This document shows, one piece after another, positions 1 to 64,000 of a stretch of 64,000 nt of DNA. Both the position numbers and the translations under genes were made by a program. The notes under the pieces were generated by a model. It saw only the letters and a program-made list of their open reading frames with translations, searched no databases and was not told where the DNA came from. The stretch is from Neoechinorhynchus agilis (Eukaryota > Animalia > Acanthocephala). How positions within the stretch are numbered: position 1 is the stretch's first letter; every line of letters begins with the position of its first letter. The DNA lies in NCBI GenBank assembly GCA_051530055.1, contig CM121342.1, positions 4,029,489 through 4,093,488 of the forward strand, given 5' to 3'.

Positions 1-1490
1 GTTTGTTTAGAACACGCATCTCGGCATGCAAAGGATAAATTGACACCAGTTTAACTCCAAGTTTTTGTAGGTTTTTACAGTTGTCCCAACGAACGAAGGA
101 CGCTATTCATTTTTTATAGATTCCCCGAAAAATCCGCTGTTTTATGCGCTTGTCTTCTCGAAAACGAGGAGCAAACTTCTACTTTGATCGTGGACGAATT
201 TGGACGACTTGTGAAGGTTTGTTTAGAACACGCATCTCGGCATGCAAAGGATAAATTGACACCAGTTTAACTCCAAGTTTTTGTAGGTTTTTACAGTTGT
301 CCCAACGAACGAAGGACGCTATTCATTTTTTATAGATTCCCCGAAAAATCCGCTGTTTTATGCGCTTGTCTTCTCGAAAACGAGGAGTAAACTTCTACTT
401 TTGATCGTGGACGAATTTGGACGACTTGTGAAGGTTTGTTTAGAACACGCATCTCGGCATGCAAAGGATAAATTGACACCAGTTTAACTCCAAGTTTTTG
501 TAGGTTTTTACAGTTGTCCCAACGAACGAAGGACGCTATTCATTTTTTATAGATTCCCCGAAAAATCCGCTGTTTTATGCGCTTGTCTTCTCGAAAACTA
601 GAAGTAAACTTCTACTTTGATCGTGGACGAATTTGGACGACTTGTGAAGGTTTGTTTAGAACACGCATCTCGCCATGCAAAGGATAAATTGACACCAGTT
701 TAACTCCAAGTTTTTGTAGGTTTTTACAGTTGTCCCAACGAACGAAGGACTCTATTCATTTTTTATAGATTCCCCGAAAAATCCGCTGTTTTATGCGCTT
801 GTCTTCTCGAAAACGAGAAGTAAATCACTTTGATCGTGGACGAATTTGGACGACTTTTGAAGGTTTGTTTAGAACACGCATCTCGGCATGCAAAGGATAA
901 ATTGACACCAGTTTAACTCTTAGTTTTTGTAGGTTTTTACAGTTGTCCCAACGAACGAAGGACGCTATTCATTTTTTATAGATTCCCCGAAAAATCCGCT
1001 GTTTTATGCGCTTGTCTTCTCGAAAACGAGGAGCAAACTTCTACTTTGATCGTGGACGAATTTGGACGACTTGTGAAGGTTTGTTTAGAACACGCATCTC
1101 GCCATGCAAAGGATAAATTGACACCAGTTTAACTCTTAGTTTTTGTAGGTTTTTACAGTTGTCCCAACGAACGAAGGACGCTATTCATTTTTTATAGATT
1201 CCCCGAAAAATCCGCTGTTTTATGCGCTTGTCTTCTCGAAAACGAGGAGCAAACTTCTACTTTTGATCGTGGACGAATTTGGACGACTTTTGAAGGTTTG
1301 TTTAGAACACGCATCTCGGCATGCAAAGGATAAATTGACACCAGTTTAACTCTTAGTTTTTGTAGGTTTTTACAGTTGTCCCAACGAACGAAGGACGCTA
1401 TTCATTTTTGATAGATTCCCCGAAAAATCCGCTGTTTTATGCGCTTGTCTTCTCGACAACTAAAAAGTAAACTTCTACTTTGATCGTGGA
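1..1490. repeat. Tandem array, ~216-217 bp unit, ~7 copies (continues past window start); unit contains a DDB1-like exon segment
   Basis: gtttgtttagaacacgcatc recurs at 1, 217, 434 etc. After ttttttatag the unit translates FPEKSAVLCACLLENEEQTSTLIVDEFGRLVKVCLE, resembling DDB1 LLGDMEGRLFMLLLE. The last copy is the most diverged. Confidence 0.9.
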
Positions 1491-1568
1491 TGACTTAAGA
1501 AGGGTATTTTAGACCTCGCGCATCTCTCAAATTGAGGAATTTGTATTGTAAAATTCGGATGAAATTGA

Positions 1569-5839: not shown

Positions 5840-5864
5840 TACTTTGGCAAAAGAAAAAACACTG

Positions 5865-7620
5865 TTCTCCTTATTTCATTTGAAGCGGAGTTTCAGTCAT
5901 TGAAAGCGGATAAAAACATGGTCGCGGACGATGTCAATTTTTTTGGGGATTTCTTTTAAAAAGCCCGCTTGAATCTATCGATTTTTTTTCGATTTTAATC
6001 ATTTATTGAAAATATTCTCCTTATTTAATTTGAAGCTCAGTTTCAGTATCCCAAAGTTTCATTGTTTTCGGTCATTGAAAGCGGATAAAAACGTGGTCGC
6101 GGACGATGTCAATTTTTTTGTGGATTTCTTTTAAAAAGTCCGCTTGAATCTATCGATTTTTTCGATTTTAATCATTTATTGAAAATATTCTCCTTATTTA
6201 ATTTGAAGCTCAGTTTCAGTATCCCAAAGTTTCATTGTTTTCGGTCATTGAAAGCGGATAAAAACGTGGTCGCGGACGATGTCAATTTTTTTGTGGATTT
6301 CTTTTAAAAAGTCCGCTTGAATCTATCGATTTTTCCCGATTTTAATCATTTATTGAAAATATTCTCCTTATTTAATTTGAAGCTCAGTTTCAGTATCCCA
6401 AAGTTTCATTGTTTTCGGTCATTGAAAGCGGATAAAAACGTGGTCGCGGACGATGTCAATTTTTTTGTGGATTTCTTTTAAAAAGTCCGCTTGAATCTAT
6501 CGATTTTTCCCGATTTTAATCATTTATTGAAAATATTCTCCTTATTTAATTTGAAGCTCAGTTTCAGTATCCCAAAGTTTCATTGTTTTCGGTCATTGAA
6601 AGCGGATAAAAACGTGGTCGCGGACGATGTCAATTTTTTTGTGGATTTCTTTTAAAAAGTCCGCTTGAATCTATCGATTTTTCCCGATTTTAATCATTTA
6701 TTGAAAATATTCTCCTTATTTAATTTGAAGCTCAGTTTCAGTATCCCAAAGTTTCATTGTTTTCGGTCATTGAAAGCGGATAAAAACGTGGTCGCGGACG
6801 ATGTCAATTTTTTTGTGGATTTCTTTTAAAAAGTCCGCTTGAATCTATCGATTTTTCCCGATTTTAATCATTTATTGAAAATATTCTCCTTATTTAATTT
6901 GAAGCTCAGTTTCAGTATCCCAAAGTTTCATTGTTTTCGGTCATTGAAAGCGGATAAAACGGTCGCGGACGATGTCAATTTTTTGTGGATTTCTTTTAAA
7001 AGTCCGCTTGAATCTATCGATTTTTCCCGATTTTAATCATTTATTGAAAATATTCTCCTTATTTAATTTGAAGCTCAGTTTCAGTATCCCAAAGTTTCAT
7101 TGTTTTCGGTCATTGAAAGCGGATAAAAACGTGGTCGCGGACGATGTCAATTTTTTTGTGGATTTCTTTTAAAAAGTCCGCTTGAATCTATCGATTTTTC
7201 CCGATTTTAATCATTTATTGAAAATATTCTCCTTATTTAATTTGAAGCTCAGTTTCAGTATCCCAAAGTTTCATTGTTTTCGGTCATTGAAAGCGGATAA
7301 AAAGTTTCAGTATCCCAAAGTTTCATTGTTTTCGGTCATTGAAAGCGGATAAAAACGTGGTCGCGGACGATGTCAATTTTTTTGTGGATTTCTTTTAAAA
7401 AGTCCGCTTGAATCTATCGATTTTTCCCGATTTTAATCATTTATTGAAAATATTCTCCTTATTTAATTTGAAGCTCAGTTTCAGTATCCCAAAGTTTCAT
7501 TGTTTTCGGTCATTGAAAGCGGATAAAAACGTGGTCGCGGACGATGTCAATTTTTTTGTGGATTTCTTTTAAAAAGTCCGCTTGAATCTATCGATTTTTT
7601 TCGATTTTAATCATTTATTG
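5865..7620. repeat. Tandem array, ~174 bp unit, ~10 copies
   Basis: attctccttatttaatttgaagc at 6014, 6187, 6361, 6535 etc.; first copy diverged; one partial internal copy near 7300. Confidence 0.95.
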
Positions 7621-7737
7621 ATTGGGTTTTTGCGAGCACATTGCTCAGATATCGAATGTTAAAAAGACCGTCTTGAGCCGATAAAAAAATCGAACAACAT
7701 TCATCAATTTATTTTAAATTTGAAACAATAAAAAGAA

Positions 7738-8489: not shown

Positions 8490-9990
8490 CAGGTCCGCCG
8501 TCACACGGTTTAAAACCCGAACAAAATCACCTCAAGTTTCTCCAAAACAAATTTTTAGCCTAAAAAGATGAAATCCGCGTTTTTCAAATATCAAAATTCT
8601 TCCGTGATTTTAACGCTTATATAAAAATCCTTGACGTCATTCCTTAAAAATGTTTTTCGCATTAAGAACCGAACAAAATCAGCTCACGTTTCTCCAAAAC
8701 AAATTTTTAGCCTTAAAAGATGGAATCCGCGTTCTTATCTAAATTCTTCCGTGATTTTATCGCTTTTATAAAGAAATCTTGGACGTCACTCGTTATAAAT
8801 GTTCTTCGCATTAAGAACCGAACAAAATCAGCTCAAGTTTCTCCAAAACAAATTTTTAGCCTTAAAAGATGGAATCCACGTTCCTATCTAAATTGTTCCG
8901 TGATTTTATCGCTTATAAAAAAATCTTGGACGTCACTCGTTATAAATGTTCCTCGCATTAAGAACCGAACAAAATCAGCTCAAGTTTCTCGAAAACAAAT
9001 TTTTAGCCTTAAAAGATGGAATCCACGTTCCTATCTAAATTGTTCCGTGATTTTATCGCTTTTACAAAGAAATCTTGGACGTCACTCGTTATAAATGTTC
9101 TTCGCATTAAGAACCGAACAAAATCAGCTCAAGTTTCTCCAAAACAAATATTTAACCTTAAAAGATGGAATCAGCGTTCTTATCTAAATTCTTCCGTGAT
9201 TTTATCGCTTTTATAAAGAAATCTTGGACGTCACTCGTTATAAATGTTCTTCGCATTAAGAACCGAAAAAAATCACCTCAAGTTTCTCCAAAAAAAATTT
9301 TTAGCCTAAAAAGATGAAATCCGCGTTTTTAAAATATCAAAATTCTTCCGTGATTTTATCGCTTATATAAAAATCCTTGACGTCATTCCTTAAAAATGTT
9401 TTTCGCATTAAGAACCGAACAAAATCAGCTCAAGTTTCTCCAAAACAAATTTTTAGCCTTAAAAGATGGAATCAGCGTTCTTATCTAAATTCTTCCGTGA
9501 TTTTATCGCTTATATAAAAATCCTTGACGTCATTCCTTAAAAATGTTTTTCGCATTAAGAACCGAAGAAAATCAGCTCACGTTTCTCCAAAACAAATTTT
9601 TAGCCTTAAAAGATGAAATCCTCGTTCCTATCTAAATTGTTCCGTGATTTTATCGCTTTTACAAAGAAATCTTGGACGTCACTCGTTATAAATGTTCCTC
9701 GCATTAAGAACCGAACAAAATCAGCTCAAGTTTCTCCAAAACAAATTTTTAGCCTTAAAAGATGGAATCCACGTTCCTATCTAAATTCTTCCGTGATTTT
9801 ATCGCTTATATAAAAAAATCTTGGACGTCATTCGTCATAAATCTTTTTCGCTCTGAGAACCGAACAAAATCAGCTCGCCGTTCTCCAAAACAAATTTTTA
9901 GCATTAAAGGATGCAATCCGCGTTCTTATCAAAATTCTTCCGTGACTTTACCGCTTATATAAAAAAACCCTGGACGTCATTCGTCATAAA
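8490..9990. repeat. Tandem array, ~149 bp unit, ~10 copies, at least two sequence variants
   Basis: aaaagatg(g/a)aatc recurs every ~149 bp; variants ccttgacgtcattccttaaaaatgttttt versus cttggacgtcactcgttataaatgttctt are interspersed. Confidence 0.95.
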
Positions 9991-10057
9991 TAATTAAGAA
10001 CCTCCCATTTAATTCCATGAGACTTTAGATGTGATTTTTTTGTCCGTTTTAAAATAG

Positions 10058-10901: not shown

Positions 10902-11639
10902 GCACTAACTTGAGTGCCAGTTCAAAAAAATAATATATTCTTCACTTTTGCGCAATAACGCCTTTTTTAGATTTTATAGCAACAACAACAATGATCTTTC
11001 GCCCAAAATAAAAATTTTCCGAGGGGAGAAAGCGGGTTTGAAAATTAGAATTAAAAATAAGCGTAAAATGGTGTAGAAAAAATTAAAATGATTTTATTTT
11101 CAAAAATCCGACTGATTTCCGAGTTTGCAAGTGTCGTTGTGATCAAAAGGCGTACGAAATCAAGCGATTGTCGAAGTAACTCAAACGAATCCGAGGTCCG
11201 CAAGACCAGGACGGCAGCTGAGTGATCCAGAAAGGCGGTGGCTATTCCAAAAATGAAAAAATCTTCCATATTTTTGAAATTATTGTTCACGTCTCCGACG
11301 AGGTTCTCAGAACGTCTTTTTAATCGAAAAAGAAATCATTTGCCGCGGCTGCACATCTTCATGGGGTTTTTACACTGTAATTCTGATCCGGATAAAATTG
11401 ATGTGTTCCATTTCCTAGAGTTTTCTTTTTCGATGAATAATTATGGCTCAGATTGTTTTAATCAGTTTGGAGATTCAAAAACGTCTCGTGTTGTTCACAA
11501 AGAAATGAGTTTGACGTAACAAATTTCTAGTTGAGAGATGTCAACAACAATTAGGTAAGGTTTTTCTACTAGAAAATAGCTAAGATCATCGTAAAAAAAG
11601 CGATCTACGATGATAAAATATTAGTTCAAATCGAAGAAT

Positions 11640-13640
11640 GTGGTTCTTCTTTCGAAATAAAGTAGAACGTCGTTTATGAGGGTCCTAGATTTTAGTTTGA
11701 TGTTAACATCAATTTTACCTCTTGGACAACCCAACGATTTCGGTCAGGGAAGTGTTCAATGTAAATGAGTTTGTACAAATCCCTCTGGATCCTTAGATTT
11801 TGAACCCTTTGACCACCTCGACACTTTCTACGAAATGTACAAATCACTAAGCTGCCGTCTTGATTTATTTGATTCCGGGTTTTGTATAACTAAATACCCT
11901 CGAATCGTCTGAGTTTCTTGGACAATCGTTTGACCAGGGCAGAGTGTTTCGACGCCAAAGGGAACGAAATAATTGCGATTCTCAACAACGGCCATTGTTG
12001 ATCCAAGAGTCGAGGTTCTTCTTTCGAAATAAAGTAGAACGTCGTTTATGAGGGTCACAGATTTTAGTTTGATGTTAACATCGATTTTACCTCTTGGACA
12101 ACCCAACGATTTCGGTTGTGAAGTGTTCATGTAAATGAGTTTGTACAAATCCCTCTGGATCCTAAGATTTTGAACCCTTTGACCACCTCGACACTTTCTA
12201 CGAAATGTACAAATCACTAAGCTGCCGTCTTGATTTATTTGATTCCCGGGTTTTGTATAACTAAATACCCTCGAATCGTCTGAGTTTCTTGGACAATCGT
12301 TTGACCAGGGCAGAGTGTTTCGACGCCAAAGAGAACGAAATAATTGCGATTCTCAACAACGGCCATTGTTGATCCAAGAGTCGAGGTTCTTCTTTCGAAA
12401 TAAAGTAGAATGTCGTTTATGAGGGTCATAGATTTTAGTTTGATGTTAACATCGATTTTACCTCTTGGACAACCCTACGATTTCGGTCAGGGAAGTGTTC
12501 AATGTAAATGAGTTTGTACAAATCCCTCTGGATCCTTAGATTTTGAACCCTTTGACCACCTCGACACTTTCTACGGAATGTACAAATCCCTAAGCTGCCG
12601 TCTTGATTTATTTGATTCCCGGGTTTTGTATAACTAAATACCCTCGAATCGTCTGAGTTTCTTGGACAATCGTTTGACCAGGGCAGTGTTTCGACGCCAA
12701 AGGGAACGAAATAATTGCGATTCTCAACAACGGCCATTGTTGATCCAAGAGTCGAGGTTCTTCTTTCGAAATAAAGTAGAACGTCGTTTATGAGGGTCCT
12801 AGATTTTAGTTTGATGTTAACATCAATTTTACCTCTTGGACAACCCTACGATTTCGGTCAGGGAAGTGTTCAATGTAAATGAGTTTGTACAAATCCCTCT
12901 GGATCCTTAGATTTTGAACCCGTTGACCACCTCGACACTTTCTACGAAATGTACAAATCACTAAGCTGCTGTCTTGATTTATTTGATCTTGCTCTTGTAT
13001 AACTAAATACCCTTGAATCGTCTGAGTTTCTTGGATAATCGTTTGACCAGGGCAGAGTGTTTCGACGCCAAAGGGAACGAAATAATTGCGATTCTCAACA
13101 ACGGCCATTGTTGATCCAAGAGTCGAGGTTCTTCTTTCGAAATAAAGTAGAACGTCGTTTATGCGGGTCCTAGATTTTAGTTTGATGTTAACATCGATTT
13201 TACCTCTTGGACAACCCAACGATTTCGGTCAGGGAAGTGTTCAATGTAAATGAGTTTGTACAAATCCCTCTGGATCCTTAGATTTTGAACCCTTTGACCA
13301 CCTCGACACTTTCTACGGAATGTACAAATCCCTAAGCTGCCGTCTTGATTTATTTGATTCCGGGTTTTGTATAACTAAATACCCTCGAATCGTCTGAGCT
13401 TCTTGGATAATCGTTTGACTAGGCAGAGTGTTTCGACGCCAAAGGGAACGAAATAATTGCGATTCTCAACAACGGCTACTGTTGATCCAAGAGTCGAGGT
13501 TCTTCTTTCGAAATAAAGTAGAACGTCGTTTATGAGGGTCACAGATTTTAGTTTGATGTTAACATCGATTTCCATCTTCTGGATAACCTTACGATTTCGG
13601 CTTTCGAAGTGTTCAATGTGTAAATGAGTTTGTACAAATC
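11640..13640. repeat. Tandem array, ~371-372 bp unit, ~5.5 copies, broken coding potential on the minus strand
   Basis: aaataaagtagaa(c/t)gtcgtttatg near 11657, 12029, 12400, 12770, 13141, 13512. Confidence 0.95.
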
Positions 13641-14210
13641 CTCTGTTCAGGCTGACTAATAACTCTCTGTGAAGAACTTCTATAGACGATGTTCTGCATT
13701 TGCTGTAGAGCTGTATAAATCCTTATCTTCAAATGGCATCTAACGCATTTTCTACAGTGATACAACAACGTACAGAAATGAATCATTGAACAATCGATCT
13801 GAAGGCGACATTTCTCATGCTCCGTTCATTCGGGACTTGAATTGATCACAGCAGCGGATCATTTTTATGTGTTCTTGCTAACGAGTCAACATTCAATTGG
13901 AAACCGATTTGAAACGAGATTCCCTTAGAGTTTGTCGATCATTAGTGAGTTTTTGACGTAACTCTCGTTGAATTTAATGTCGGAAATCGATCTTTAAAAT
14001 TTGTGTGACTTTTTTTTTGAACGATTTGAGCTTCATTTCTTCGATTTCCGAATTTTTTTGTGCATCTCAGATGTTAGACTTTTAAAATCCTCCGCATTTT
14101 TTTAAAAAATATTTATTTTCACACTACAAGAAATTTTTATTTGTTCAACTTTACGGATCAATGCTGGTTTTAAAAAAAATGACGAAATCTTTCTAGACTC
14201 CGGTCACTAA

Positions 14211-16475: not shown

Positions 16476-16539
16476 CTATTATGTAATTGTCGTCGTTGGT
16501 CGGTCGCTTCGGATTCGTCAGTGTAATCCAATTTTGTAT

Positions 16540-41072: not shown

Positions 41073-43200
41073 TTACTGTAAAGAAATATTAATATATTGA
41101 TAATCTTTCAGGCCACTTCTGGGTCCGTAATTTTAAGCTTTAAAATGGTAGAACCCGTTTCAACCTCTAGATAAACCGATATTTTAACATAAAGAAATCA
41201 CGGCATTGCAGAGTAGGTTTTTAATCCGAGCATCGATCAAGTGTTAAAATGTTGAATTAATAAAGAAAACCTCGAATTTAATAGAAGATTTTTGCTATGA
41301 CCCCGTTTAAAACTCGTTTATTAACCAAATGAAAACGGTTAAATAGAATGTAAATAGCACAAATCGGCCTCCTTCGTATCCTCTGCCGTTTTTATGTTCT
41401 TTACGGACAAAATAAAATCATCTTTAATTTCCACTGAATTTGATCGATCCATCCCGCTATCAACCGAGAATGTGATAGTGTCACAATTCTCTAAACTCGA
41501 CTTTTGAGCTTCATTTGCTCTTCTGGTTCTTTAGAACAACCATCAAAAATCACCGTAGCGAATTTGTCATTCTTTAACGTTTCTTCAACAATTTTCGCCC
41601 ATAATTTTACTGTAAAGAAATATTAATATATTGATAATCTTTCAGGCCACTTCTGGGTCCGTAATTTTAAGCTTTAAAATGGTAGAACCCGTTTCAACCT
41701 CTAGATAAACCGATATTTTAACATAAAGAAATCACGGCATTGCAGAGTAGGTTTTTAATCCGAGCATCGATCAAGTGTTAAAATGTCTAATTAATAAAGA
41801 AAACCTCGAATTTAATGAAGATTTTTATGACCCCGTTTAAAACTCGTTTATTAACCAAATGAAAACGGTTAAATAGAATGTAAATAGCACAAATCGGCCT
41901 CCTTCGTATCCTCTGCCGTTTTTATGTTCTTTACGGACAAAATAAAATCATCTTTAATTTCCACTGAATTTGATCGATCCATCCCGCTATCAACCGAGAA
42001 TGTGATAGTGTCACAATTCTCTAAACTCGACTTTTGAGCTTCATTTGGCTCTTCTGGTTCTTTAGAACAACCATCAAAATCACCGTAGCGAATTTGTCAT
42101 TCTTTAACGTTTCTTCAACAATTTTCGCCCATAATTTTACTGTAAAGAAATATTAATATATTGATAATCTTTCAGGCCACTTCTGGGTCCGTAATTTTAA
42201 GCTTTAAAATGGTAGAACCCGTTTCAACCTCTAGATAAACCGATATTTTAACATGAAGAAATCACGGTATTGCAGAGTAGGTTTTTAATCCGAGCATCGA
42301 TCAAGTGTTAAAATGTCTAATTAATAAAGAAAACCTCGAATTTAATAGAAGATTTTTGCTATGACCCCGTTTAAAACTCGTTTATTAACCAAATGAAAAC
42401 GGTTAAATAGAATGTAAATAGCACAAATCGGCCTCCTTCGTATCCTCTGCCGTTTTTATGTTCTTTACGGACAAAATAAAATCATCTTTAATTTCCACTG
42501 AATTTGATCGATCCATCCCGCTATCAACCGAGAATGTGATAGTGTCACAATTCTCTAAACTCGACTTTTGAGCTTCATTTGGCTCTTCTGGTTCTTTAGA
42601 ACAACCATCAAAAATCACCGTAGCGAATTTGTCATTCTTTAACGTTTCTTCAACAATTTTCGCCCATAATTTTACTGTAAAGAAATATTAATATATTGAT
42701 AATCTTTCAGGCCACTTCTGGGTCCGTAATTTTAAGCTTTAAAATGGTAGAACCCGTTTCAACCTCTAGATAAACCGATATTTTAACATAAAGAAATCAC
42801 GGCATTGCAGAGTAGGTTTTTAATCCGAGCATCGATCAAGTGTTAAAATGTCTAATTAATAAAGAAAACCTCGAATTTAATAGAAGATTTTTGCTATGAC
42901 CCCGTTTAAAACTCGTTTATTAACCAAATGAAAACGGTTAAATAGAATGTAAATAGCACAAATCGGCCTCCTTCGTATCCTCTGCCGTTTTTATGTTCCT
43001 TACGGACAAAATAAAATCATCTTTAATTTCCACTGAATTTGATCGATCCATCCCGCTATCAACCGAGAATGTGATAGTGTCACAATTCTCTAAACTCGAC
43101 TTTTGAGCTTCATTTGGCTCTTCTGGTTCTTTAGAACAACCATCAAAAATCACCGTAGCGAATTTGTCATTCTTTAACGTTTCTTCAACAATTTTCGCCC
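41073..43200. repeat. Tandem array, ~533 bp unit, 4 copies, containing the 3' coding end, stop and 3' flank of the adjacent minus-strand gene
   Basis: The ttcgccc junction recurs at ~41598, 42128, 42663, 43198; it encodes repeated ..KIVEETLKND..LCYLHSI*. Confidence 0.95.
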
Positions 43201-43520
43201 AACGTACGCGCAAATCCTGCCAGGCGTTATTCTTCATTGGCACATCGCAGGAAATGCTGATTTGATTTACGTTGGTGTCAAGATGAGAGCAAATCGCTGA
43301 TGTAGCCATTCGTCGCTTGCAATCAATAGAACTGCTCTGATCATCAACAAGGCGATCATTTCCCTTTTCTTTCCATTGATCACCTCCCACACATTTCCAT
43401 ACTGAACTCAGGATACGCCGAATACCCTTAAATCTGGTCGCTTCCTTCAAGTTTGAGTCAATCTTTTTATTACGTTGCCAGAGATCCCTGGTTTTCTTAC
43501 CACAAACTGAGACTTTGATA
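42938..43520 (-). CDS. Hypothetical protein, last exon (5' exon unresolved)
   Basis: Open frame of about 195 codons after the acceptor ttccttatag near 43520; no recognisable family. Confidence 0.5.
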
Positions 43521-44630: not shown

Positions 44631-44671
44631 AACGTTTGCAGAGATCGCAAGTTCTCGTTTTCGGTATAACG

Positions 44672-46494: not shown

Positions 46495-49400
46495 CTATTC
46501 GATCATGTTATCGGCCATACGACAGGTTCCAGAGTATGTCAATTTTTGAATCAAGCAATCGAATTCCGCTAAAATTAAATTAAATGAATGTTTCGTCCAG
46601 TTAAAAGAAAACCAATATTCGCTCTTGCTTGTTTGGTAAAGTTCTTTTTTGAAAAATGATATAGAATAATACCGACGAACATGAATATAAGACACGAGAT
46701 CATGCTGTTGAATTCCTCAATGATTCCAAAAATACAAATCGCAATGGTCATTATTCCAAAGATAATAACTGCCCACAATGGAGCCTAATTAATAGATTGT
46801 TATTAAAAAAAAGGAACAAAACTTACTTCATAAATCTTAGACTTTTGGTAATCTTCCTCGTTCAACTTTGTTTTAATTCCATATTCGAGGTACCGTAGGT
46901 ATAAGAAACTGATGAACGTCACGACGTAGAAAAAGGATTCGCAGAAGGTGCTCATATAAAGTAGTACATCGATGTCTCCAACTAGTAAATATACAATCGA
47001 TGCCAATGTCTATGCGATTTGTTTTAAAACAAAATGGTATCATTAAGGAAAATGAAATTATAAAAACCTAGAGCCTCCTCATTGGCTAGGCAAATTAATA
47101 AAATTTCCAATCTTATCGGCTGAGTAAAACTGTGAACTGAGTATTCATATATTCCAAAGTTGAAGAAGTAAAGACCTAGATTTTACGAGACGGTTAATCA
47201 AAGGACATCAAATAACCAATAGTATTGATAAACCCAAAAATGGTATTGTTTGTAAAACTTTAAAAAATCTATTTCGAACCTTTGTGTTTGAACCCGTGAG
47301 AAGGTGACGTTTTCAAATGTTTTATAAAACTCCTTAAACACAATTTGTTTTAAAGAAGAAAAAATTGAAATTTAAGCCCAAAACCCACACAAAGACAGGG
47401 GGAGCTTTACTTACAACAATAGCGATCGAATTGACTGGAGTTAAATAGTTCCAATGGAGAAAGCACAAAGATATCGGCATATGTCCTTTCCTTGCAGCTC
47501 CAAAGACCAATCTTAAACTTCATTTAAAAAAAGGCTTTTGTGTCGAGAAACCAACCTTGAAGTAGTAAAAATTATACTGTTTGTTGATCCAAAGATCGAA
47601 AGAGATACGAGAATGGAGAATACGGGTCCAAGCGATGGATGGAACTTGCTCATCATTTCCTAACTCATGGCACTCAGGATAATTTACGAATTAGCATGGG
47701 ATAACAAACGACGGCGATTGCAGGGGACGACAATATTTCACTCTTGTCCAAAGTAGAGAAATATGCCACATTAGTAAAGACATAAAGACCGGTCACGCAA
47801 GTGATGGCTAATATTGCGGCACGTTTAAGATCTCTAATCAATAATGGTCATACTAAATGACTATGGAAGTTCAATACCTTTCAGGACGCTTCAATTCCTC
47901 AGCTGCTAGATTAAGATAATTCCTTAAAATTGAATATTGGCGAAAATCCACAAGCACACACACAAAGTTTCATACCATCCGGAGTATGCAAAACTACAGC
48001 CGTAAAAAGCAGTCATTACTGATGCTACCGATCGAGTTCCATCAAAAGCGTTCTGAAAGTTTTCAATGCCGCTGCCTTTTGAAAAACGACGAAGTTAAAT
48101 TAGACAAAAATACAAGAAAACCTGAACTTAAATTGTATAATCCGGTCACGACTATTCCAAGCAGTGCCAATGCTTTCCCGAACGCGAACGACAATTGAAA
48201 AAATTCGACAAGTTTCATACTCCAGCAATTTATGAATGCAAAGAACACTTCGAAATTAGATAAAAGGTTGAATGTTACATCGGAAAGTACTTTTGAGGCG
48301 TGAATGACATATTTAAAAACGGAGACCATAAACCAATGGAAAACCTTAATAATGACCAAGGTCATTTCTCAAAAATACCTAGCCGTAAAGTTCCATCTAC
48401 GAAGTTTTAAAGTAAGATCATTGGTCCATTTTATAAAATGCGATAAAATAGACTAAACATTTTGCCTTTTCAATATTTTAGGTTTTTGTAAAAAATCAAA
48501 GAATTCCATGAAATGACGGGAAAACAGGTCGTCTCCTTGGGACTTCACCTGTCCGAATACGATTTCTAAACGCTACTTTTCCCTTGTAGTTTCAGGCAAA
48601 AAGTTCAAAAGACCGAAAAATGGAGATCCGTCGCTCTAGATTTTTTTTAAAACCTATCTCACTCTTGAGACAATTTGTGCCGTCGGATAAAGCATCGCAC
48701 AATTTTTAATTTTGGAAGGGTTGTTTTGTGGCGTAGAAATTAAAATGATTTTATTTTTAAAACCGCCGACATTTCGAAGGCACAATCTTGTACGCCTTTT
48801 GATCAAGGTTGCTTGCAAGTCTTTTCAAACCAAACCTTGATAAACGCGTACAAGATTATGCCTTCGAAATATCGGCAGTTTTAAGCCAGAAAACAATCTA
48901 AAGCATTTTTATCAGTGATTCAGAAAGGATCCTCGATGCAATGGAGGATTCCAAAGTTCCCATTGGAACTTGGGTATTTATGCAACGTAAAATGAAATTT
49001 CCTGTTGAAGAAACTTCCTTAGGACTTAATTTTGAGATTTTGTTATTAGACCGCTTAACTTTATAGATTTTAAACGATCTCCGAAATAAACAACGTAAAA
49101 TGGAATTTCCTGCTGGAAAACTCTATAAAATAAAACGTATTCTTTTTCGTTCAATTGACGAATACTATTAGTTAGGTTATATATTTCCTTAGAACTTCAA
49201 TTTGATTGCAAGAGAAATTCTAGGCAATTTCGATTTTCATGTTAGACCGCTTAAACTTTATAGATTTAAACGATCTCCGAAATAAACAACGTAAAATGGA
49301 ATTTCCTGCTGGAAAACTCTATAAAAACGTATTCCTTTTCGTTCAATTGACGAATACTATTAGTTAGGTTATATATTTCCTTAGAACTTCAATTTGATTG

Positions 49401-51892
49401 CAAGAGAAATTCTAGGCAATTTCGATTTTCATGTTAGACCGCTTAACTTTATAGATTTAAACGATCTCCGAAATAAACAACGTAAAATGGAATTTCCTGC
49501 TGGAAAACTCTATAAAATAAAACGTATTCTTTTTCGTTCAATTGACGAATACTATTAGTTAGGTTATATATTTCCTTAGAACAATTTGATTGCAAGAGAA
49601 ATTCTAGGCAATTTCGATTTTCATGTTAGACCGCTTAAACTTTATAGATTTAAACGATCTCCGAAATAAACAACGTAAAATGGAATTTCCTGTTGAAAAA
49701 CTCTATAAAAACGTATTCCTTTTCGTTCAATTGACGAATACTATTAGTTAGGTTATATATTTCCTTAGAACTTCAATTTGATTGCAAGAGAAATTCTAGG
49801 CAATTTCGATTTTCATGTTAGACCGCTTAACTTTATAGATTTAAACGATCTCCGAAATAAACAACGTAAAATGGAATTTCCTGTTGAAAAACTCTAAAAT
49901 AAAACGTATTCTTTTTCGTTCAATTGACGAATACTATTAGTTAGGTTATATATTTCCTTAGAACTTCAATTTGATTGCAAGAGAAATTCTAGGCAATTTC
50001 GATTTTCATGTTAGACCGCTTAAACTTTATAGATTTAAACGATCTCCGAAATAAACAACGTAAAATGGAATTTCCTGTTGAAAAACTCTATAAAAACGTA
50101 TTCCTTTTCGTTCAATTGACGAATACTATTAGTTAGGTTATATATTTCCTTAGAACTTCAATTTGATTGCAAGAGAAATTCTAGGCAATTTCGATTTTCA
50201 TGTTAGACCGCTTAAACTTTATAGATTTAAACGATCTCCGAAATAAACAACGTAAAATGGAATTTCCTGCTGGAAAACTCTATAAAATAAAACGTATTCT
50301 TTTTCGTTCAATTGACGAATACTATTAGTTAGGTTATATATTTCCTTAGAACTTCAATTTGATTGCAAGAGAAATTCTAGGCAATTTCGATTTTCATGTT
50401 AGACCGCTTAACTTTATAGATTTAAACGATCTCCGAAATAAACAACGTAAAATGGAATTTCCTGTTGAAAAACTCTATAAAAACGTATTCTTTTTCGTTC
50501 AATTGACGAATACTATTAGTTAGGTTATATATTTCCTTAGAACTTCAATTTGATTGCAAGAGAAATTCTAGGCAATTTCGATTTTCATGTTAGACCGCTT
50601 AAACTTTATAGATTTAAACGATCTCCGAAATAAACAACGTAAAATGGAATTTCCTGCTGGAAAACTCTATAAAATAAAACGTATTCTTTTTCGTTCAATT
50701 GACGAATACTATTAGTTAGGTTATATATTTCCTTAGAACTTCAATTTGATTGCAAGAGAAATTCTAGGCAATTTCGATTTTCATGTTAGACCGCTTAAAC
50801 TTTATAGATTTAAACGATCTCCGAAATAAACAGCGTAAAATGGAATTTCCTGTTGAAAAACTCTATAAAAACGTATTCCTTTTCGTTCAATTGACGAATA
50901 CTATTAGTTAGGTTATATATTTCCTTAGAACTTCATTTGATTGCAAAATTCTAGGCAATTTCGATTTTCATGTTAGACCGCTTAACTTTATAGATTTAAA
51001 CGATCTCCGAAATAAACAGCGTAAAATGGAATTTCCTGTTGAAAAACTCTATAAAAACGTATTCCTTTTCGTTCAATTGACGAATACTATTAGTTAGGTT
51101 ATATATTTCCTTAGAACTTCAATTTGATTGCAAGAGAAATTCTAGGCAATATCGATTTTCATGTTAGACCGCTTAACTTTATAGATTTAAACGATCTCCG
51201 AAATAAACAACGTAAAATGGAATTTCCTGTTGAAAAACTCTATAAAATAAAACGTATTCCTTTTCGTTCAATTGACGAATACTATTAGTTAGGTTATATA
51301 TTTCCTTAGAACTTCAATTTGATTGCAAGAGAAATTCTAGGCAATATCGATTTTCATGTTAGACGGCTTAACTTTATAGATTTTAAACGATCTCCGAAAT
51401 TAAATAAACTGTGGCCTTTAAAAGAAACTCACGTAAAACGCAACATCCAATGCATATTTTTGGAATAGAACTTATAGTGCATAAATCCGCGGGTTTTATG
51501 AGATATTCACTGAGGGTAAGTCCACTGATCGCCAGACCAGAAGGAATGATAAGCAAGAGTCTTGTATAGCAAAACAGAAATCCAAGGTATTCACCGAGTG
51601 TTTGACATATATATTCATAATCTCCTCCAGCTTTAGGCATTTTTGTTCCTAGCTCAATATACATCATGCTTCCGAGAGCCACCAAAACTCCATTTAGTAT
51701 CCACATAATAAGAGCAACTCCAATGGAACCCGCGTCTCGAGCAACAGTTCCAGCGCTCACAAAAATACCACTGCCCACTGTTGAATTGAAAATCACTGCT
51801 GCACCTCTCCACATCCCCATTGTTTTTTTCAATTCCGGCTCTTCTTTCACTTCATTTGACATTCCAAAACTCTTAGATCTCGAATGCACCAT
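46495..51892 (-). CDS. SLC7/LAT-family amino-acid transporter, multi-exon; first intron ~3.2 kb; 3' end approximate
   Basis: GSGIFVS, YIELGT.MPKAGGDYEYI...GFLF, then spliced FAFINCWSMK..Q..FAFGKALAL.GIVVTG; donor GTGAGT near 51433, acceptor near 48248. Confidence 0.85.
48757..48884. mobile_element. Imperfect hairpin element, related to sequence at ~11070-11170
   Basis: aaaaccgccgacatttcgaaggcacaatcttgtacg / cgtacaagattatgccttcgaaatatcggcagtttt. Confidence 0.65.
48985..51400. repeat. Tandem array, ~192-196 bp unit, ~12 copies, inside intron 1 of the transporter
   Basis: ttagaccgctta at 49046, 49242, 49434, 49626 etc.; recurring variants. Confidence 0.95.
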
Positions 51893-52349
51893 TTTTTTTA
51901 CAAAGTCGTGGCGGTTCGTTTAGACAGCAGTTTAAAAAAACCCAACCCCAATGCATTTAGTCATCTATCCAACGATGAAGTCTTAGTACACGAGACGTCC
52001 TTAAAGACTTGGTCATGCTTATTTTGTAGTTTGTCTTTGAGTCGCAAGGATTCAATAAATCACTGCTTTTCAGTACTTTAAAAACTTTAAACCAAAATGA
52101 TTGACGAAAATTAATCATGTTGGATTTGTTTCGAAATGTGATATATCGAAGAAAATTTAATCTTTTTGCCCAAACATTTTTATAACGTCTGCAAAAAAGA
52201 GACTTGGATACAAACAAGTTTCAGTCCGATTTAACTTTCCACAATACCAAACTAGTAACGTCGAAAAATAGCTCTTTTAAAGATATAAACTTGATTGATT
52301 TAATTGTACCAAATCGCAACCATTCAATGTTTCGTAGAATTTTTTTGTT

Positions 52350-53240
52350 CCATAAAGACCAAGTAATCTTGTAATTGGAATAAAATTAAAAAATTATCAA
52401 CCGCCTTTGCGTGTTCTTAAAATCATTCATAAACTCTGTTTATTTTAGAATTTTTTTAAAGAAACTCACAGTGGGTTTTTAGGCAAAACTTAGTAATCTT
52501 CGTTAAGTTTCCGCAAAATCTTAATTCGAAACGGTTTAAAAAGGTTATCAAAAATAAAATGGACTGTGATTTAATAAAGCCATAGCGTTTCAAATATTTT
52601 TAACGGTAATCAGATAATCAATTGTACAAAAAAAAGAGATCTTAAGTTCTCCATAAAGACCAAGTAATCTTGTAATTGGAATAAAATTAAAAAATTATCA
52701 ACCGCCTTTGCGTGTTCTTAAAATCATTCATAAACTCTGTTTATTTTAGAATTTTTTTAAAGAAACTCACAGTGGGTTTTTAGGCAAAACTTAGTAATCT
52801 TCGTTAAGTTTCCGCAAAATCTTAATTCGAAACGGTTTAAAAAGGTTATCAAAAATAAAATGGACTGTGATTTAATAAAGCCATAGCGTTTCAAATATTT
52901 TTAACGGTAATCAGATAATCAATTGTAAAAAAAAAGAGATCTTAAGTTCTCCATAAAGACCAAGTAATCTTGTAATTGGAATAAAATTAAAAAATTATCA
53001 ACCGCCTTTGCGTGTTCTTAAAATCATTCATAAACTCTGTTTATTTTAGAATTTTTTTAAAGAAACTCACAGTGGGTTTTTAGGCAAAACTTAGTAATCT
53101 TCGTTAAGTTTCCGCAAAATCTTAATTCGAAACGGTTTAAAAAGGTTATCAAAAATAAAATGGACTGTGATTTAATAAAGCCATAGCGTTTCAAATATTT
53201 TTAACGGTAATCAGATAATCAATTGTACAAAAAAAATCTT
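52350..53240. repeat. Tandem array, ~300 bp unit, 3 copies
   Basis: ccataaagaccaagtaatc at ~52350, 52651, 52951. Confidence 0.95.
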
Positions 53241-53719: not shown

Positions 53720-54915
53720 TCAGTGTAAATTAAGTTGTCCTATTCGGCTTTTTCCTTTCAGGAACACATCCCATCGATATTTTAGGAACCGAATGAAATC
53801 AGTTAGGCTCTCAAAATCGTACGGCAATGAGTTTTGTACAATTCTCCGGATTCTCAGATACCTCCTCCCGAGGATCCTACACTCATCAGTGAGTTTCCTC
53901 TTCCCTGCAGAACGGTATTTCGTTTCCTTTTGTTGTGAGTCAAAGGCGACGGTGGATTTTGAATCCTTTTGACCCTCAAACCGAAGTCCACTGGACCGCT
54001 TCGACAAAACTACGAAATGTACAAACTCTGCCATCTTTTATACCTTGGGATTAGTGTTGAATTTTGTTGTCTTCTGGGAAGCGGTTTAGGTTTTTCTGTA
54101 GAACATCTTTTACTCGGATTTTTCCTTTTGGGCACACATCCAACCGATATTTTACATAGGGGAACAGAATGAAATCTGTTAGACTTTCAAAAAAAGAATA
54201 GCTCCGGATTCTCAGATCCCTCCTCCCGAGGATCCTACACTCATCAGTGAGTTTCCTCTTCCCTGCAGAACGGTATTTCGTTTCCTTTTGTTGTGAGTCA
54301 AAGGCGACGGTGGATTTTGAATCCTTTTGACCCTCAAACCGAAGTCCACTGGACCGCTTCGACAAAACTACGAAATGTACAAACTCTGCCATCTTTTATA
54401 CCTTGGGATTAGTGTTGAATTTTGTTGTCTTCTGGGAAGCGGTTTAGGTTTTTCTGTAGAACATCTTTTACTCGGATTTTTCCTTTGGGCACACATCCAA
54501 CCGATATTTTACATAGGGGAACAGAATGAAATCTGTTAGACTTTCAAAAAAAGAATAGCTCCGGATTCTCAGATACCTCCTCCCGAGGATCCTACACTCA
54601 TCAGTGAGTTTCCTCTTCCCTGCAGAACGGTATTTCGTTTCCTTTTGTTGTGAGTCAAAGGCGACGGTGGATTTTGAATCCTTTTGACCCTCAAACCGAA
54701 GTCCACTGGACCGCTTCGACAAAACTACGAAATGTACAAACTCTGCCATCTTTTATACCTTGGGATTAGTGTTGAATTTTGTTGTCTTCTGGGAAGCGGG
54801 TTTAAGTGTTTCTCTAGAACATCTTTTACTCGGATTTTTCCTTTTGGGCACACTGTTAATCGATATTTTTGGATAAGGGAACCGAATGAAATCTGTTAGA
54901 CTTTCAAAAAACAAA
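53720..54915. repeat. Tandem array, ~358 bp unit, ~3.3 copies, open frame on the minus strand
   Basis: ORF starts at 54034, 54392 and 54749 (MAEFVHFVV...). Confidence 0.95.
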
Positions 54916-56680: not shown

Positions 56681-56711
56681 GCCGGCCTGCGCTCAATGCC
56701 CCAGGACCGTA

Positions 56712-57726
56712 CGGTTAAGAGTTTGTAAGAATCCCTCCGGATTCTCAGATACCTCCCGGGGAGGCGGGACTCATCAGTGAGTTTCCTCCTCCCTTCAACG
56801 GGGTATTTCGTCCCCTTTGGCTGTGCGTCATTGGTGGTAAAGGATTTTGACTAAAATTGAATGACGATATCATTTTAGAGCTATATTTTCTCACTATTTT
56901 GGTTCTGTCTCTCTTTTTTCGTTCCTTAAAATCATCATTCAATTTTAGTCAATCCCTTCAGTTGTCCGGCTTATTTTTTTAGGCATAAAGCCAAACCAAT
57001 TAAATCAGAGAAGTGATATAACCACATTGTCTCCAATGCACGGTTAAGAGTTTGTAAGAATCCCTCCGGATCCTCAGATACCTCCCGGGGAGGCGGGACT
57101 CATCAGTGAGTTTCCTCCTCCCTTCAACGGGGTATTTCGTCCCCTTTGGCTGTGCGTCATTGGTGGTAAAGGATTTTGACTAAAATTGAATGATGATATC
57201 ATTTTAGAGCTATATTTTCTCACTATTTTGGTTCTGTCTCTCTTTTTTCGTTCCTTAAAATCATCATTCAATTTTAGTCAATCCCTTCAGTTGTCCGGCT
57301 TATTTATTTAGGCATAAAGCCAAACCAATTAAATCAGAGAAGTGATATAACCACATTGTCTCCAATGCACGGTTAAGAGTTTGTAAGAATCCCTCCGGAT
57401 CCTCAGATACCTCCCGAGGAGGCGGGACTCATAGTGAGTTTCCTCCTCCCTTCAACGGGGTATTTCGTCCCCTTTGGTTGTGCGTCATTGGCGGTAACGG
57501 ATTTGACTAAAATTGAATGATGATTTTAACGAAAAAAGAGAGACAGAACCAAATAGTGAGAAAATATAGCTCTAAAATGATATCATCATTCAATTTTAGT
57601 CAATCCTTTACCACCAATGACGCACAGCCAAAGGGGACGAAATACCCGTTGAAGGGAGGAAAACTCACTAATGAGTCCGCCTCCGGGAGTATCTGAGCAT
57701 CCGGAGGGATTGTTAAGAACTTTTAA
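56712..57726. repeat. Tandem array, ~329 bp unit, ~2.5 forward copies plus an inverted partial copy, in the palindrome spacer
   Basis: cggttaagagtttgtaagaatccctccgga at ~56712, 57041, 57370; 57530-57726 is the reverse complement of the unit. Confidence 0.9.
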
Positions 57727-61909: not shown

Positions 61910-61979
61910 ATTATCTATAAGAAATAGGCCTCCTTTTTAACGACGGGAGTTTTTACGACGATCACCGCAAAAAAAGACG

Positions 61980-64000
61980 TTGTTCAAAAAGAATTTATTT
62001 TCTAAAGAAATGTTTTTTTTTGATTTGGTTGTTCAAAAAAGAATTAAACGGAAAAACTGGTCATAGTTGAACGCTTACAAGAGGGAAAATATTTTCTAAA
62101 ATCATTTTGAGGTTCAAAGAAATCGTTTAAGAAAAAGAACATCGCATCGGTTTTAAAGGATTCCGGAATCAAATTTAAATTTCTCTTAGAACGATTCAAT
62201 GGTTTCAAAATAAAAGCAATAGCGAGGATATTTTCTTAAGAAATGTTTTTTTTGATTTGGTTGTTCAAAAAAGAATTAAACGGCAAAACTGGTCATAGTT
62301 GAACGCTTACAAGAGGGAAAATATTTTCTAAAATCATTTTGAGGTTCAAAAAAATCGTTTAAGAAAAAGAACATCGCAACGGTTTTAAAGGATTCCGGAA
62401 TCAAATTTGAATTTCTCTTAGGACGATTCAATGGTTTCAAAATAAAGCAAAAGCGAGGATATTTTCTTAAGAAATGTTTTTTTATTTGGTTGTTCAAAAA
62501 AGAATTAAACGGCGAAACTGGTCATAGTTGAACGCTTACAAGAGGGAAATATTTTCTAAAATCATTTTGAGGTTCAAAGAAATCGTTTAAGAAAAAGAAC
62601 ATCGCAACGGTTTTAAAGGATTCCGGAATCAAATTTAAATTTCTCTTAGGACGATTCAATGGTTTCAAAATAAAAGCAATAGCGAGGATATTTTCTTAAG
62701 AAATGTTTTTTTTATTTGGTTGTTCAAAAAAGAATTAAACGGCGAAACTGGTCATAGTTGAACGCTTACAAGAGGGAAAATATTTTCTAAAATATTTTGA
62801 GGTTCGAAATGTTTAAGAAAAAGAACATCGCAACGGTTTTAAAGATTGGAATCAATTTGAATTTCTAGACGATTCAATGGTTTCAAAATAAAAGCAATAG
62901 CGAGGATATTTTCTTAAGAAATGTTTTTTTTGATTTGGTTGTTCAAAAAAGAATTAAACGGCGAAACTGGTCATAGTTGAACGCTTACAAGAGGGAAAAT
63001 ATTTTCTAAAATCATTTTGAGGTTCAAAGAAATCGTTTAAGAAAAAGAACATCGCAACGGTTTTAAAGGATTCCGGAATCAAATTTGAATTTCTCTTAGG
63101 ACGATTCAATGGTTTCAAAATAAAAGCAATAGCGAGGATATTTTCTTAAGAAATGTTTTTTTTATTTGGTTGTTCAAAAAAGAATTAAACGGCAAAACTG
63201 GTCATAGTTGAACGCTTACAAGAGGGAAAATATTTTCTAAAATCATTTTGAGGTTCAAAGAAATCGTTTAAGAAAAAGAACATCGCAACGGTTTTAAAGG
63301 ATTCCGGAATCAAATTTAAATTTCTCTTAGGACGATTCAATGGTTTCAAAATAAAAGCAAAAGCGAGGATATTTTCTTAAGAAATGTTTTTTTTGATTTG
63401 GTTGTTCAAAAAAGAATTAAACGGCGAAACTGGTCATAGTTGAACGCTTACAAGAGGGAAAATATTTTCTAAAATCATTTTGAGGTTCAAAAAAATCGTT
63501 TAAGAAAAAGAACATCGCAACGGTTTTAAAGGATTCCGGAATCAAATTTGAATTTCTCTTAGGACGATTCATGGTTTCAAATAAAAGCAATAGCGAGGAT
63601 ATTTTCTTAAGAAATGTTTTTTTTTGATTTGGTTGTTCAAAAAAGAATTAAACGGCGAAACTGGTCATAGTTGAACGCTTACAAGAGGGAAAATATTTTC
63701 TAAAATCATTTTGAGGTTCAAAAAAATCGTTTAAGAAAAAGAACATCGCAACGGTTTTAAAGGATTCCGGAATCAAATTTAAATTTCTCTTAGGACGATT
63801 CAATGGTTTCAAAATAAAAGCAATAGCGAGGATATTTTCTTAAGAAATGTTTTTTTTTGATTTGGTTGTTCAAAAAAGAATTAAACGGCGAAACTGGTCA
63901 TAGTTGAACGCTTACAAGAGGGAAAATATTTTCTAAAATCATTTTGAGGTTCAAAGAAATCGTTTAAGAAAAAGAACATCGCAACGGTTTTAAAGGATTC
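61980..64000. repeat. Tandem array, ~232 bp unit, at least 8.5 copies (runs off the window end)
   Basis: ctggtcatagttgaacgc at 62057, 62289, 62518 etc. Confidence 0.95.

What the first reader, a model, noticed from the sequence alone, without database searches (positions are those of the whole stretch)
1..64000. Genome peppered with locally derived tandem arrays of similar total length and roughly nucleosome-multiple unit sizes
Seen: 13 separate arrays cover about 20 kb (about a third of the window). Units are about 129, 149, 174, 176, 194, 217, 232 | 300, 329, 358, 370, 372 | 533 bp, while each array spans only about 1-2.4 kb. Several units are copies of the immediately adjacent gene sequence. 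Edge copies are the most diverged, and linked variants recur in non-adjacent copies, which fits real ageing arrays better than pure read noise. Known: microDNA/eccDNA sizes cluster at mono- and di-nucleosome lengths. Inference: an active process such as excision of chromatin-sized circles, rolling-circle copying and in-situ reinsertion, or repeated microhomology template switching, makes short local satellites even inside genes. The size grouping rests on only 13 values.
Basis: partly seen in the sequence, partly recalled or inferred. Interest (0 to 1): 0.8.

Follow-up and report, generated by a model that had tools for sequence, protein, structure and literature searches.

The report
Private tandem arrays crowding worm genes
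About a third of this gene-dense stretch of the thorny-headed worm Neoechinorhynchus agilis is real, young head-to-tail repeat arrays, mostly copied from local DNA. Their unit sizes do not cluster at nucleosome multiples beyond chance, and their junctions fit stepwise slippage and unequal exchange rather than one-shot copying of DNA circles.

Summary
All 13 arrays are present (units 129-533 bp) and cover 20.1 kb, or 31% of the window. The window lies on chromosome CM121342.1 of the N. agilis assembly, which was built from unamplified nanopore and Illumina DNA. The 20 kb of flanks I fetched are about as dense (31%).

Variants shared by non-adjacent copies, 2- and 5-unit higher-order repeats, and an array built on the real end of a DDB1 exon show genomic arrays rather than read noise.

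Two claims fail:
With the flank arrays (91, 92 and 173 bp) added, p is 0.2-0.6.
- All local origin: three arrays (329, 358, 371 bp) share a roughly 110-140 nt module and form one dispersed family.

Junctions show short direct repeats of 2 to about 20 nt at the founding duplication. They also show older junction variants kept at array edges and block duplications. This fits in-situ slippage or template switching followed by unequal exchange. It contradicts a single rolling-circle burst for at least three arrays. Circles remain untested.

The scan noted the same pattern on other DNA of this genome. The closest known parallels are the scattered satellites of nematodes and the euchromatic repeats of Tribolium.

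The parts
1..1496 (+). 217 bp array, cut by the window start. The whole array is 13.5 copies (2,935 bp), from 1,438 bp before the window to position 1496. It lies in the DDB1 intron.
   Evidence: The first copy is the real exon end and keeps an open reading frame. Later copies have broken frames. There is a 433 bp higher-order repeat, and variants are shared by non-adjacent copies.
5863..7621 (+). 174 bp array, about 10 copies. It starts about 24 bp after the stop codon of the LRR gene.
   Evidence: Substitution identity is 99.5%. The first copy lacks a 25 bp internal slip-duplication that all other copies carry. One copy has an extra 52 bp duplication.
8510..9991 (+). 149 bp array, 9.9 copies; the oldest array (about 91% identity).
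   Evidence: It has a 5-unit (746 bp) higher-order repeat, with copy 1 matching copy 6 and copy 3 matching copy 8. A 10 nt direct repeat (ATTAAGAACC) sits at the unit start and in the right flank.
11630..13645 (+). 371 bp array, 5.4 copies; a member of the 329/358/371 family.
   Evidence: It shares a 32 nt motif with the 329 bp unit and further stretches with the 358 bp unit. Its right end falls inside the shared motif.
29575..30896 (+). 176 bp array, about 7.6 copies, inside a hairpin-type insert that splits the B4GALT gene.
   Evidence: The unit folds into a roughly 100 nt hairpin (z = -4.7). The left flank at 29538-29592 pairs with the unit.
31508..33420 (+). 372 bp array, about 5.7 copies. 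It overlaps the first 40 nt of the B4GALT reading frame. Two copies are damaged by G/T-rich junk.
   Evidence: The clean copies are 99.8% identical. The junk lies at 32848-32907 and 32991-33037.
36848..37801 (+). 129 bp array (units 124-136 bp), 7.4 copies, with a 50 bp internal duplication.
   Evidence: The right-hand junctions keep progressively more of the right flank, which shows in-situ origin with a 2 nt (CA) microhomology and later junction deletions.
41070..43201 (+). 533 bp array, 4.0 copies.
   Evidence: It has a whole number of copies, sharp ends and 99% identity.
49036..51403 (+). 192 bp array, 12.3 copies. Its right end overlaps the last 21 nt of an amino-acid permease gene.
   Evidence: There is a 2-unit (387 bp) higher-order repeat and a degenerate older copy in the left flank.
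52349..53235 (+). 300 bp array, 2.96 copies.
   Evidence: Identity is 99.8%. The right flank repeats the unit start imperfectly over about 35 nt, which looks like the short direct repeat that seeded the array.
53740..54911 (+). 358 bp array, 3 copies, plus a degenerate older copy at 53740-53816; a family member.
   Evidence: The edges keep an older, longer unit form. The inner junctions carry a deletion variant.
56711..57524 (+). 329 bp array, 2.47 copies, in the spacer of a perfect 1,628 nt inverted repeat; a family member.
   Evidence: The unit forms strong hairpins (z = -5.4).
57503..57726 (-). Inverted partial copy of the 329 bp unit, joined to the array at a palindrome inside the unit.
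   Evidence: (91.6% identity on the minus strand).
61996..64000 (+). 231 bp array, cut by the window end. The whole array is 9.7 copies (2,244 bp), ending 239 bp past the window. It starts 86 bp upstream of the TFIIB start codon.
   Evidence: The weak snoRNA-like Rfam hits lack C and D boxes.

Best explanation
These are real, mostly young tandem arrays (short satellites) in the nuclear genome of Neoechinorhynchus agilis. Most are private to their locus. They were seeded in place from introns, gene spacers, an exon end and a hairpin insert.

Shown:
- The founding duplications lie between short direct repeats of 2 to about 20 nt, or have blunt joins.
- Arrays then changed stepwise: junction deletions, internal slip-duplications, and duplication of 2- and 5-unit blocks.
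- Derived variants spread through the interior while older forms remain at the edges.

Inferred: seeding was by replication slippage or template switching. Growth and homogenisation were by unequal sister-chromatid exchange or gene conversion. The arrays fill the short spacers of a compact 46 Mb genome and often reach to within tens of bases of start and stop codons.

The unit sizes form a broad spread from 91 to 533 bp, not nucleosome steps. Three arrays belong to one dispersed family that carries a conserved module of unknown role.
For: - Arrays and coordinates.
- Organism and record: (GCA_051530055.1, CM121342.1; proteins named N. agilis).
- No amplification step in the assembly: PMC12690905.
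- Real variation: informative substitution sites and higher-order repeats.
- In-situ origin of the 217 bp array from the DDB1 exon end.
- Junction series in the 129 bp array. Whole-number copy counts with a few nt of filler in the 174, 149, 533, 300 and 358 bp arrays. Direct repeats of 10 nt (149 bp array) and about 35 nt imperfect (300 bp array).
- The array switches to an inverted copy at a palindrome beside the 329 bp array.
- The unselected flanks are 31% arrays.
- No shared motif among units outside the one family.
Against: - There are no two-copy duplications of 100-3000 bp spacing in the 64 kb window outside the arrays. Only one occurs in the flanks (107 bp x 2). The smallest array is 814 bp. 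A slow stepwise process might be expected to leave more two-copy stages, so growth may come in bursts.
- Several arrays have sharp ends and fractional copy numbers (371 bp: 5.4; 329 bp: 2.5; 176 bp: 7.6; 372 bp: 5.7). This also fits insertion of ready-made concatemers.
- Copy number falls with unit length (rho -0.52, p 0.07). Length-limited synthesis would predict this too.
- Copy numbers rest on one hybrid assembly of a pool of 50 worms, and one array holds uncorrected junk.
Confidence: 0.6

Rival explanations
1. Chromatin-sized DNA circles are cut out, copied by rolling-circle synthesis and put back at the same locus or nearby, giving arrays born as kilobase-long multi-copy blocks.
For: - Array length is independent of unit length, and copy number falls with unit length.
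- Two-copy stages are nearly absent.
- Some arrays have sharp ends and fractional copy numbers.
- One family (329/358/371) sits at three loci.
- The idea is current for beetle and fly satellites (PMC4675708; titles and abstracts).
Against: - A single circle gives one junction type. The 129, 358 and 174 bp arrays carry several junction or unit variants, with ancestral forms at the edges.
- Block duplications of 2 and 5 units point to unequal exchange.
- The nucleosome-multiple sizes that motivated the idea are within chance.
- No circle data exist.
Confidence: 0.2
2. The arrays, or their copy numbers, are artefacts of long-read sequencing or hybrid assembly.
For: - G/T-rich junk replaces parts of two 372 bp units.
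- Many differences between copies are indels.
- Two inverted repeats of 1.6 and 3.8 kb are exactly 100% identical, which may reflect polishing.
- Only one assembly carries this DNA.
Against: - No amplification was used, and reads of at least 5 kb span every array (PMC12690905).
- Substitution variants shared by non-adjacent copies and 2- and 5-unit higher-order repeats cannot come from noise.
- The first 217 bp copy keeps the DDB1 reading frame while later copies have decayed.
- Edge copies and junction series show history.
Confidence: 0.07
3. The arrays are cargo of mobile elements or are tandem small-RNA gene clusters, as found elsewhere in this genome (snoRNA arrays, hammerhead or Penelope arrays), rather than arrays of arbitrary local DNA.
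For: - The 176 bp array sits inside a hairpin-type insert.
- The 329/358/371 family shares a structured module with 2 covarying pairs. Its minus strand carries CUGAUGAG and CGAAA boxes.
- Earlier notes report snoRNA and ribozyme arrays in this genome.
Against: - Rfam finds only two tRNAs at gathering score, and no hammerhead or credible snoRNA even at E up to 10 on the arrays tested.
- No unit has a box C/D layout.
- Units outside the one family share no motif.
- Hairpin strength of units is no greater than in control DNA.
Confidence: 0.08

Closest known systems
Scattered satellites of holocentric nematodes ('satellite explosion', PMC3634726; complex tandem repeats of Nippostrongylus, PMC5765664)
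   Same: Both have many mutually unrelated, species-specific tandem arrays spread through gene-bearing DNA. Most arrays are under a few kb.
   Different: Nematode motifs are mostly under 50 bp and total about 2.5 Mb in C. elegans. Here units are 91-533 bp and fill about a third of an 84 kb stretch. To my own knowledge, not tested here, acanthocephalan chromosomes are described as monocentric.
Euchromatic tandem-repeat families Cast1-Cast9 of Tribolium castaneum (PMC4675708; PMC11610590)
   Same: Both are short arrays in gene-rich regions. Units near 170 and 340 bp were noted there and linked to nucleosome length, and rolling-circle spread was proposed.
   Different: The Tribolium repeats are families with many arrays on several chromosomes and make up about 4% of the genome. 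Here 10 of the 13 window arrays have no second copy in the 77 kb compared.
Drosophila 1.688 / Rsp-like euchromatic satellites (bioRxiv 10.1101/846238)
   Same: Both are short satellite arrays near genes, and spread by DNA circles has been discussed for them (listed; I read only the abstract line).
   Different: Those are dispersed families that move to new loci. Here most arrays were made from the sequence already at the locus.
Duplications between short direct repeats in flap-endonuclease (rad27/FEN1) mutants of yeast (own knowledge, not checked here)
   Same: In both, the founding events are flanked by short direct repeats.
   Different: Those duplications are small and form no kilobase arrays. 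The state of the worm's replication and repair genes was not examined.

Membership tests
Satellite / tandem-repeat DNA in euchromatin | Head-to-tail copies of a unit of about 100 bp or more, homogenised within the array | tested here: met
   There are 13 arrays with 2.5-13.5 copies. Substitution identity is 91-99.8%.
Satellite family in the usual sense (Tribolium Cast, Drosophila 1.688) | The same unit present as arrays at many loci | tested here: inconclusive
   Within 77 kb only the 329/358/371 trio is related. The rest of the genome could not be searched.
Nucleosome-sized satellites | Unit lengths peak at 1x and 2x one spacing (about 170 and 340 bp) | tested here: not met
   For the 13 window units, p=0.08-0.15. 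For 16 units including the flanks, p=0.2-0.6. Units of 91, 92, 129, 231 and 300 bp fall between the expected peaks. The sample is small.
Rolling-circle products of DNA circles | One junction type in all copies of an array | tested here: not met
   The 129 bp array has four junction variants. The 358 and 174 bp arrays have edge copies of an older unit form. Other arrays are uniform.
Rolling-circle products of DNA circles | Unit-length circular DNA exists | not testable with these tools
   No read data or circle data are on hand.
Transposon-borne internal tandem repeats | Array lies between element termini (inverted repeats or hairpin ends) | tested here: inconclusive
   Only the 176 bp array region was scanned for flanking inverted repeats, and it sits in a hairpin-type insert. 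In-register BLAST shows inverted unit copies only beside the 176 and 329 bp arrays. The other arrays were not scanned for element termini.
Tandem small-RNA gene arrays (snoRNA, spliced leader, 5S, hammerhead) | Unit matches a curated RNA family or has box C/D layout | tested here: not met
   Rfam searches at gathering and E-value thresholds found nothing, and no unit has a box C/D layout. The module of the 329/358/371 family remains unexplained.
Amplification or assembly concatemer | Copies differ only by random noise, and amplified DNA was used | tested here: not met
   Shared substitution variants and higher-order repeats are present. Library preparation was unamplified (PMC12690905).

The most novel reading that the evidence does not exclude
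N. agilis may have an unusually active, lineage-specific process that amplifies DNA in bursts. It could work by template switching at replication forks or through DNA circles. It would turn almost any 90-530 bp piece of intron or spacer into a kilobase array, skipping the two-copy stage. If so, roughly a third of its gene-bearing DNA would be private satellites of recent birth. One possible cause is the loss or change of a replication or repair factor in this gene-poor parasite.
Probability: 0.25. Interest if true: 0.75.

Novelty: new member of a known kind. Interest (0 to 1): 0.45.

Why it matters
How satellites are born is still argued mostly from old, large families. Here many young arrays sit next to the single-copy DNA they came from, with readable founding junctions and intermediate variants. 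That allows the seeding and growth steps to be studied directly.

There are practical consequences too:
- The arrays reach into exons, start codons and stop codons.
- DDB1 is annotated as three separate genes across one of these arrays.
- Promoters and untranslated regions must lie inside some arrays.

The genome paper I could search does not describe this repeat load. Two related papers contain no mention of tandem or satellite repeats (PMC12256650) or of repeats (PMC9523657).

Tried and rejected
- Hammerhead ribozyme in the 329/358 module. The minus strand has CUGAUGAG and CGAAA boxes, but in an order that gives no standard three-helix fold, and Rfam has no hit.
- Spliced-leader RNA gene for the same module. 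It has a GTA after a conserved AGTTT and a U-rich Sm-like site, but the would-be leader differs between arrays and no transcript data could be reached. Left open and judged unlikely.
- snoRNA arrays. The weak Rfam hits in the 231 and 329 bp units lack C and D boxes, and my own box scan found none.
- Hairpins as a general trigger. Fold z-scores of units do not differ from control DNA (p=0.30).
- A shared sequence motif. None was found outside the one family.
- Independent confirmation in other assemblies. Every successful protein look-up returned the NCBI genome record alone.
- Four look-ups with guessed single-exon products found nothing.
- Sampling random loci through paralogues. The kinase and TFIIB searches returned only this region's own genes, so only 20 kb of flanks could be added.
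- A first folding script timed out.
Full report
WHERE THE WINDOW COMES FROM

A single-exon LRR protein of the window is found only on NCBI record GCA_051530055.1, CM121342.1, a 16.4 Mb chromosome. Window position 1 is record position 4,029,489. Two of the window's gene products are named by NCBI as hypothetical proteins of Neoechinorhynchus agilis.

The genome paper (PMC12690905) describes the data and assembly:
- DNA came from a pool of about 50 worms, sequenced on nanopore R9.4 and Illumina, plus a little HiFi. No amplification step is mentioned.
- Reads of at least 5 kb were kept.
- Assembly was MaSuRCA hybrid with Flye, then Hi-C scaffolding, giving 46.2 Mb.
- Neither that paper nor its supplement describes the tandem-repeat content. 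Two related papers contain no mention of tandem or satellite repeats or of repeats.

THE OBSERVATION

Tandem Repeats Finder, a k-mer spacing scan and in-register BLAST find all 13 arrays.

| Array (window coordinates) | Unit (bp) |
|---|---|
| 1-1496 | 217 |
| 5863-7621 | 174 |
| 8510-9991 | 149 |
| 11630-13645 | 371 |
| 29575-30896 | 176 |
| 31508-33420 | 372 |
| 36848-37801 | 129 |
| 41070-43201 | 533 |
| 49036-51403 | 192 |
| 52349-53235 | 300 |
| 53844-54911 | 358 |
| 56711-57524 | 329 |
| 61996-64000 | 231 |

They sum to 20.1 kb, or 31% of the window.

Fetching the flanks (L001, L002, L003) completes the two cut arrays. The 217 bp array is 13.5 copies (2,935 bp). The 231 bp array is 9.7 copies (2,244 bp). 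The flanks also add:
- 173 bp x 4.9 copies, ending 37 bp before the DDB1 start codon
- 208 bp x 4.2 copies and 107 bp x 2.0 copies
- a 2.1 kb coding-like repeat with 21 and 91 bp periods
- 92 bp x at least 24.7 copies

Leaving out the continuations of the two cut arrays, the 20.2 kb of unselected flank is 31% arrays. The window is therefore not a local outlier.

First-reader notes on other pieces of this genome describe the same picture, and two follow-ups confirmed it on other DNA. I did not check those notes myself.

REAL OR ARTEFACT

Copies are 97-99.8% identical in substitutions, and 91% in the 149 bp array. Many of the differences are indels, some of which may be read error. Several features cannot be noise:
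- Substitution variants are shared by non-adjacent copies.
- The 149 bp array has a 5-unit, 746 bp higher-order repeat in which copy 1 matches copy 6 and copy 3 matches copy 8.
- The 192 and 217 bp arrays have 2-unit repeats.
- The first copy of the 217 bp array is the true end of a DDB1 exon with an open reading frame. Later copies have broken frames. The next exon aligns to human DDB1 from about residue 309.

One blemish is that G/T-rich junk replaces parts of two 372 bp units. It looks like uncorrected long-read sequence, so exact copy numbers deserve caution.

THE SIZE CLAIMS

After allowing for the scan over periods, p is 0.08-0.15. Adding the flank arrays gives p=0.2-0.6. Units of 91, 92, 129, 231 and 300 bp fall between the supposed steps.

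Complete arrays span 0.81-2.94 kb. Array length does not track unit length (rho 0.21). Copy number tends to fall with unit length (rho -0.52, p 0.07).

One point does stand out. The window holds no two-copy tandem duplication outside the arrays, and the flanks hold only one.

LOCAL ORIGIN

Ten of the 13 window units have no relative among the 15 units compared across the window and flanks.

The exception is a family. The 329 and 358 bp units share about 110-140 nt at 78% identity. The 371 bp unit carries the ends of the same module with the middle deleted. The module folds into a plausible multi-hairpin shape with only 2 covarying pairs. It has no Rfam match. Its role is unknown.

The 176 bp unit is a hairpin that pairs with the left flank, so it arose by amplification inside a hairpin-type insert in B4GALT.

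JUNCTIONS AND MECHANISM

- **129 bp array.** The junctions change step by step from the right flank inwards. The outermost junction keeps the flank sequence up to a 2 nt CA overlap, the next keeps less, and the inner four carry the shortest form.
- **358 bp array.** The edges, including a degenerate copy at 53740-53816, keep a longer ancestral unit. The inner junctions carry a deletion variant.
- **174 bp array.** The first copy lacks a 25 bp slip-duplication present in all others, and one copy has a further 52 bp duplication.
- **Copy counts.** The 174, 149, 533, 300 and 358 bp arrays hold whole numbers of copies, give or take a few nt of filler.
- **Seeding repeats.** The 149 bp unit starts with the same 10 nt as the right flank. 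The 300 bp unit start is repeated imperfectly over about 35 nt in the right flank.
- **329 bp array.** It turns into an inverted copy at a palindrome inside the unit. It sits in the spacer of a perfect 1,628 nt inverted repeat.

Together these show founding duplications between short direct repeats, followed by repeated slippage, block duplication and spread of derived variants. I read this as replication slippage or template switching followed by unequal sister-chromatid exchange.

A single rolling-circle burst would give identical junctions, so it is contradicted for at least the 129, 358 and 174 bp arrays. It is not excluded for the uniform arrays with sharp ends and fractional copy numbers (371, 329, 176 and 372 bp). 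The scarcity of two-copy stages also leaves room for burst-like growth.

WHAT WAS RULED OUT

- Units are not richer in hairpins than control DNA.
- Units share no motif outside the one family.
- Units have no box C/D layout.
- Units match no RNA family.

POSITION RELATIVE TO GENES

The arrays fill introns and short spacers and come very close to coding sequence:
- 37 bp before the DDB1 start codon
- about 24 bp after the LRR gene stop codon
- 66 bp before the next gene start
- 86 bp before the TFIIB start codon
- overlapping the B4GALT start and an amino-acid permease stop

DDB1 is annotated as three separate genes across the array.

COMPARISON WITH KNOWN CASES

- Scattered, unrelated, species-specific satellites are known from holocentric nematodes. 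There the motifs are mostly under 50 bp and total about 2.5 Mb in C. elegans (PMC3634726).
- Euchromatic repeats with units near 170 and 340 bp, the nucleosome argument and the rolling-circle proposal are all published for Tribolium. There they form multi-locus families making up about 4% of the genome (PMC4675708).

This case differs in the local density, the larger units, and the private, locally seeded nature of most arrays. I file it as a new member of a known kind.

The genome-wide extent, the privacy of the units and the circle question need the whole assembly and the reads, which I could not reach.

Noticed in passing
window 17984-21765 and 25118-28899: A perfect (100%) 3,782 nt inverted duplication with a 3,352 nt spacer that holds the FoxO-like reading frame. 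Each arm carries a tRNA-Gly(TCC) gene. Exact identity may mean a very recent event, gene conversion, or homogenising by read polishing.
   Followed up: partly
window 54987-56614 and 57798-59425: A perfect 1,628 nt inverted repeat. Its 1,183 nt spacer holds the 329 bp array, an inverted partial unit, and a 63 nt piece (56618-56680) inverted relative to 55739-55801. It looks like nested template switches.
   Followed up: partly
window 32848-32907 and 32991-33037: G/T-rich low-complexity stretches replace parts of two 372 bp repeat units. They are probably uncorrected long-read sequence in the assembly.
   Followed up: no
window 56719-56860, 53844-53990, 11767-11798: The 329, 358 and 371 bp arrays share a conserved, hairpin-rich module. 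Its minus strand carries CUGAUGAG and CGAAA boxes, but there is no Rfam hit. Its role is unknown; a small RNA gene or a mobile-element end are possibilities.
   Followed up: partly
window 16270-16480 and 48759-48882: Long hairpins that score weakly against plant microRNA precursor models, well below the gathering scores. They may belong to the hairpin elements or introns noted elsewhere in this genome.
   Followed up: no
L002 5032-7170 (minus strand; just right of the window): A 712-codon open reading frame built from 21 nt (7-residue) repeats. The called genes in this stretch lie on the opposite strand.
   Followed up: no
L001 2909-3949, 6768-8393, 8531-9742: DDB1 is called as three separate genes in the public record. 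One break coincides with the 217 bp array in its intron.
   Followed up: partly
window 43897-44038 and 44473-44614: A 142 nt direct repeat at a spacing of 576 nt. This is a non-tandem repeat, found next to the 533 bp array region.
   Followed up: no
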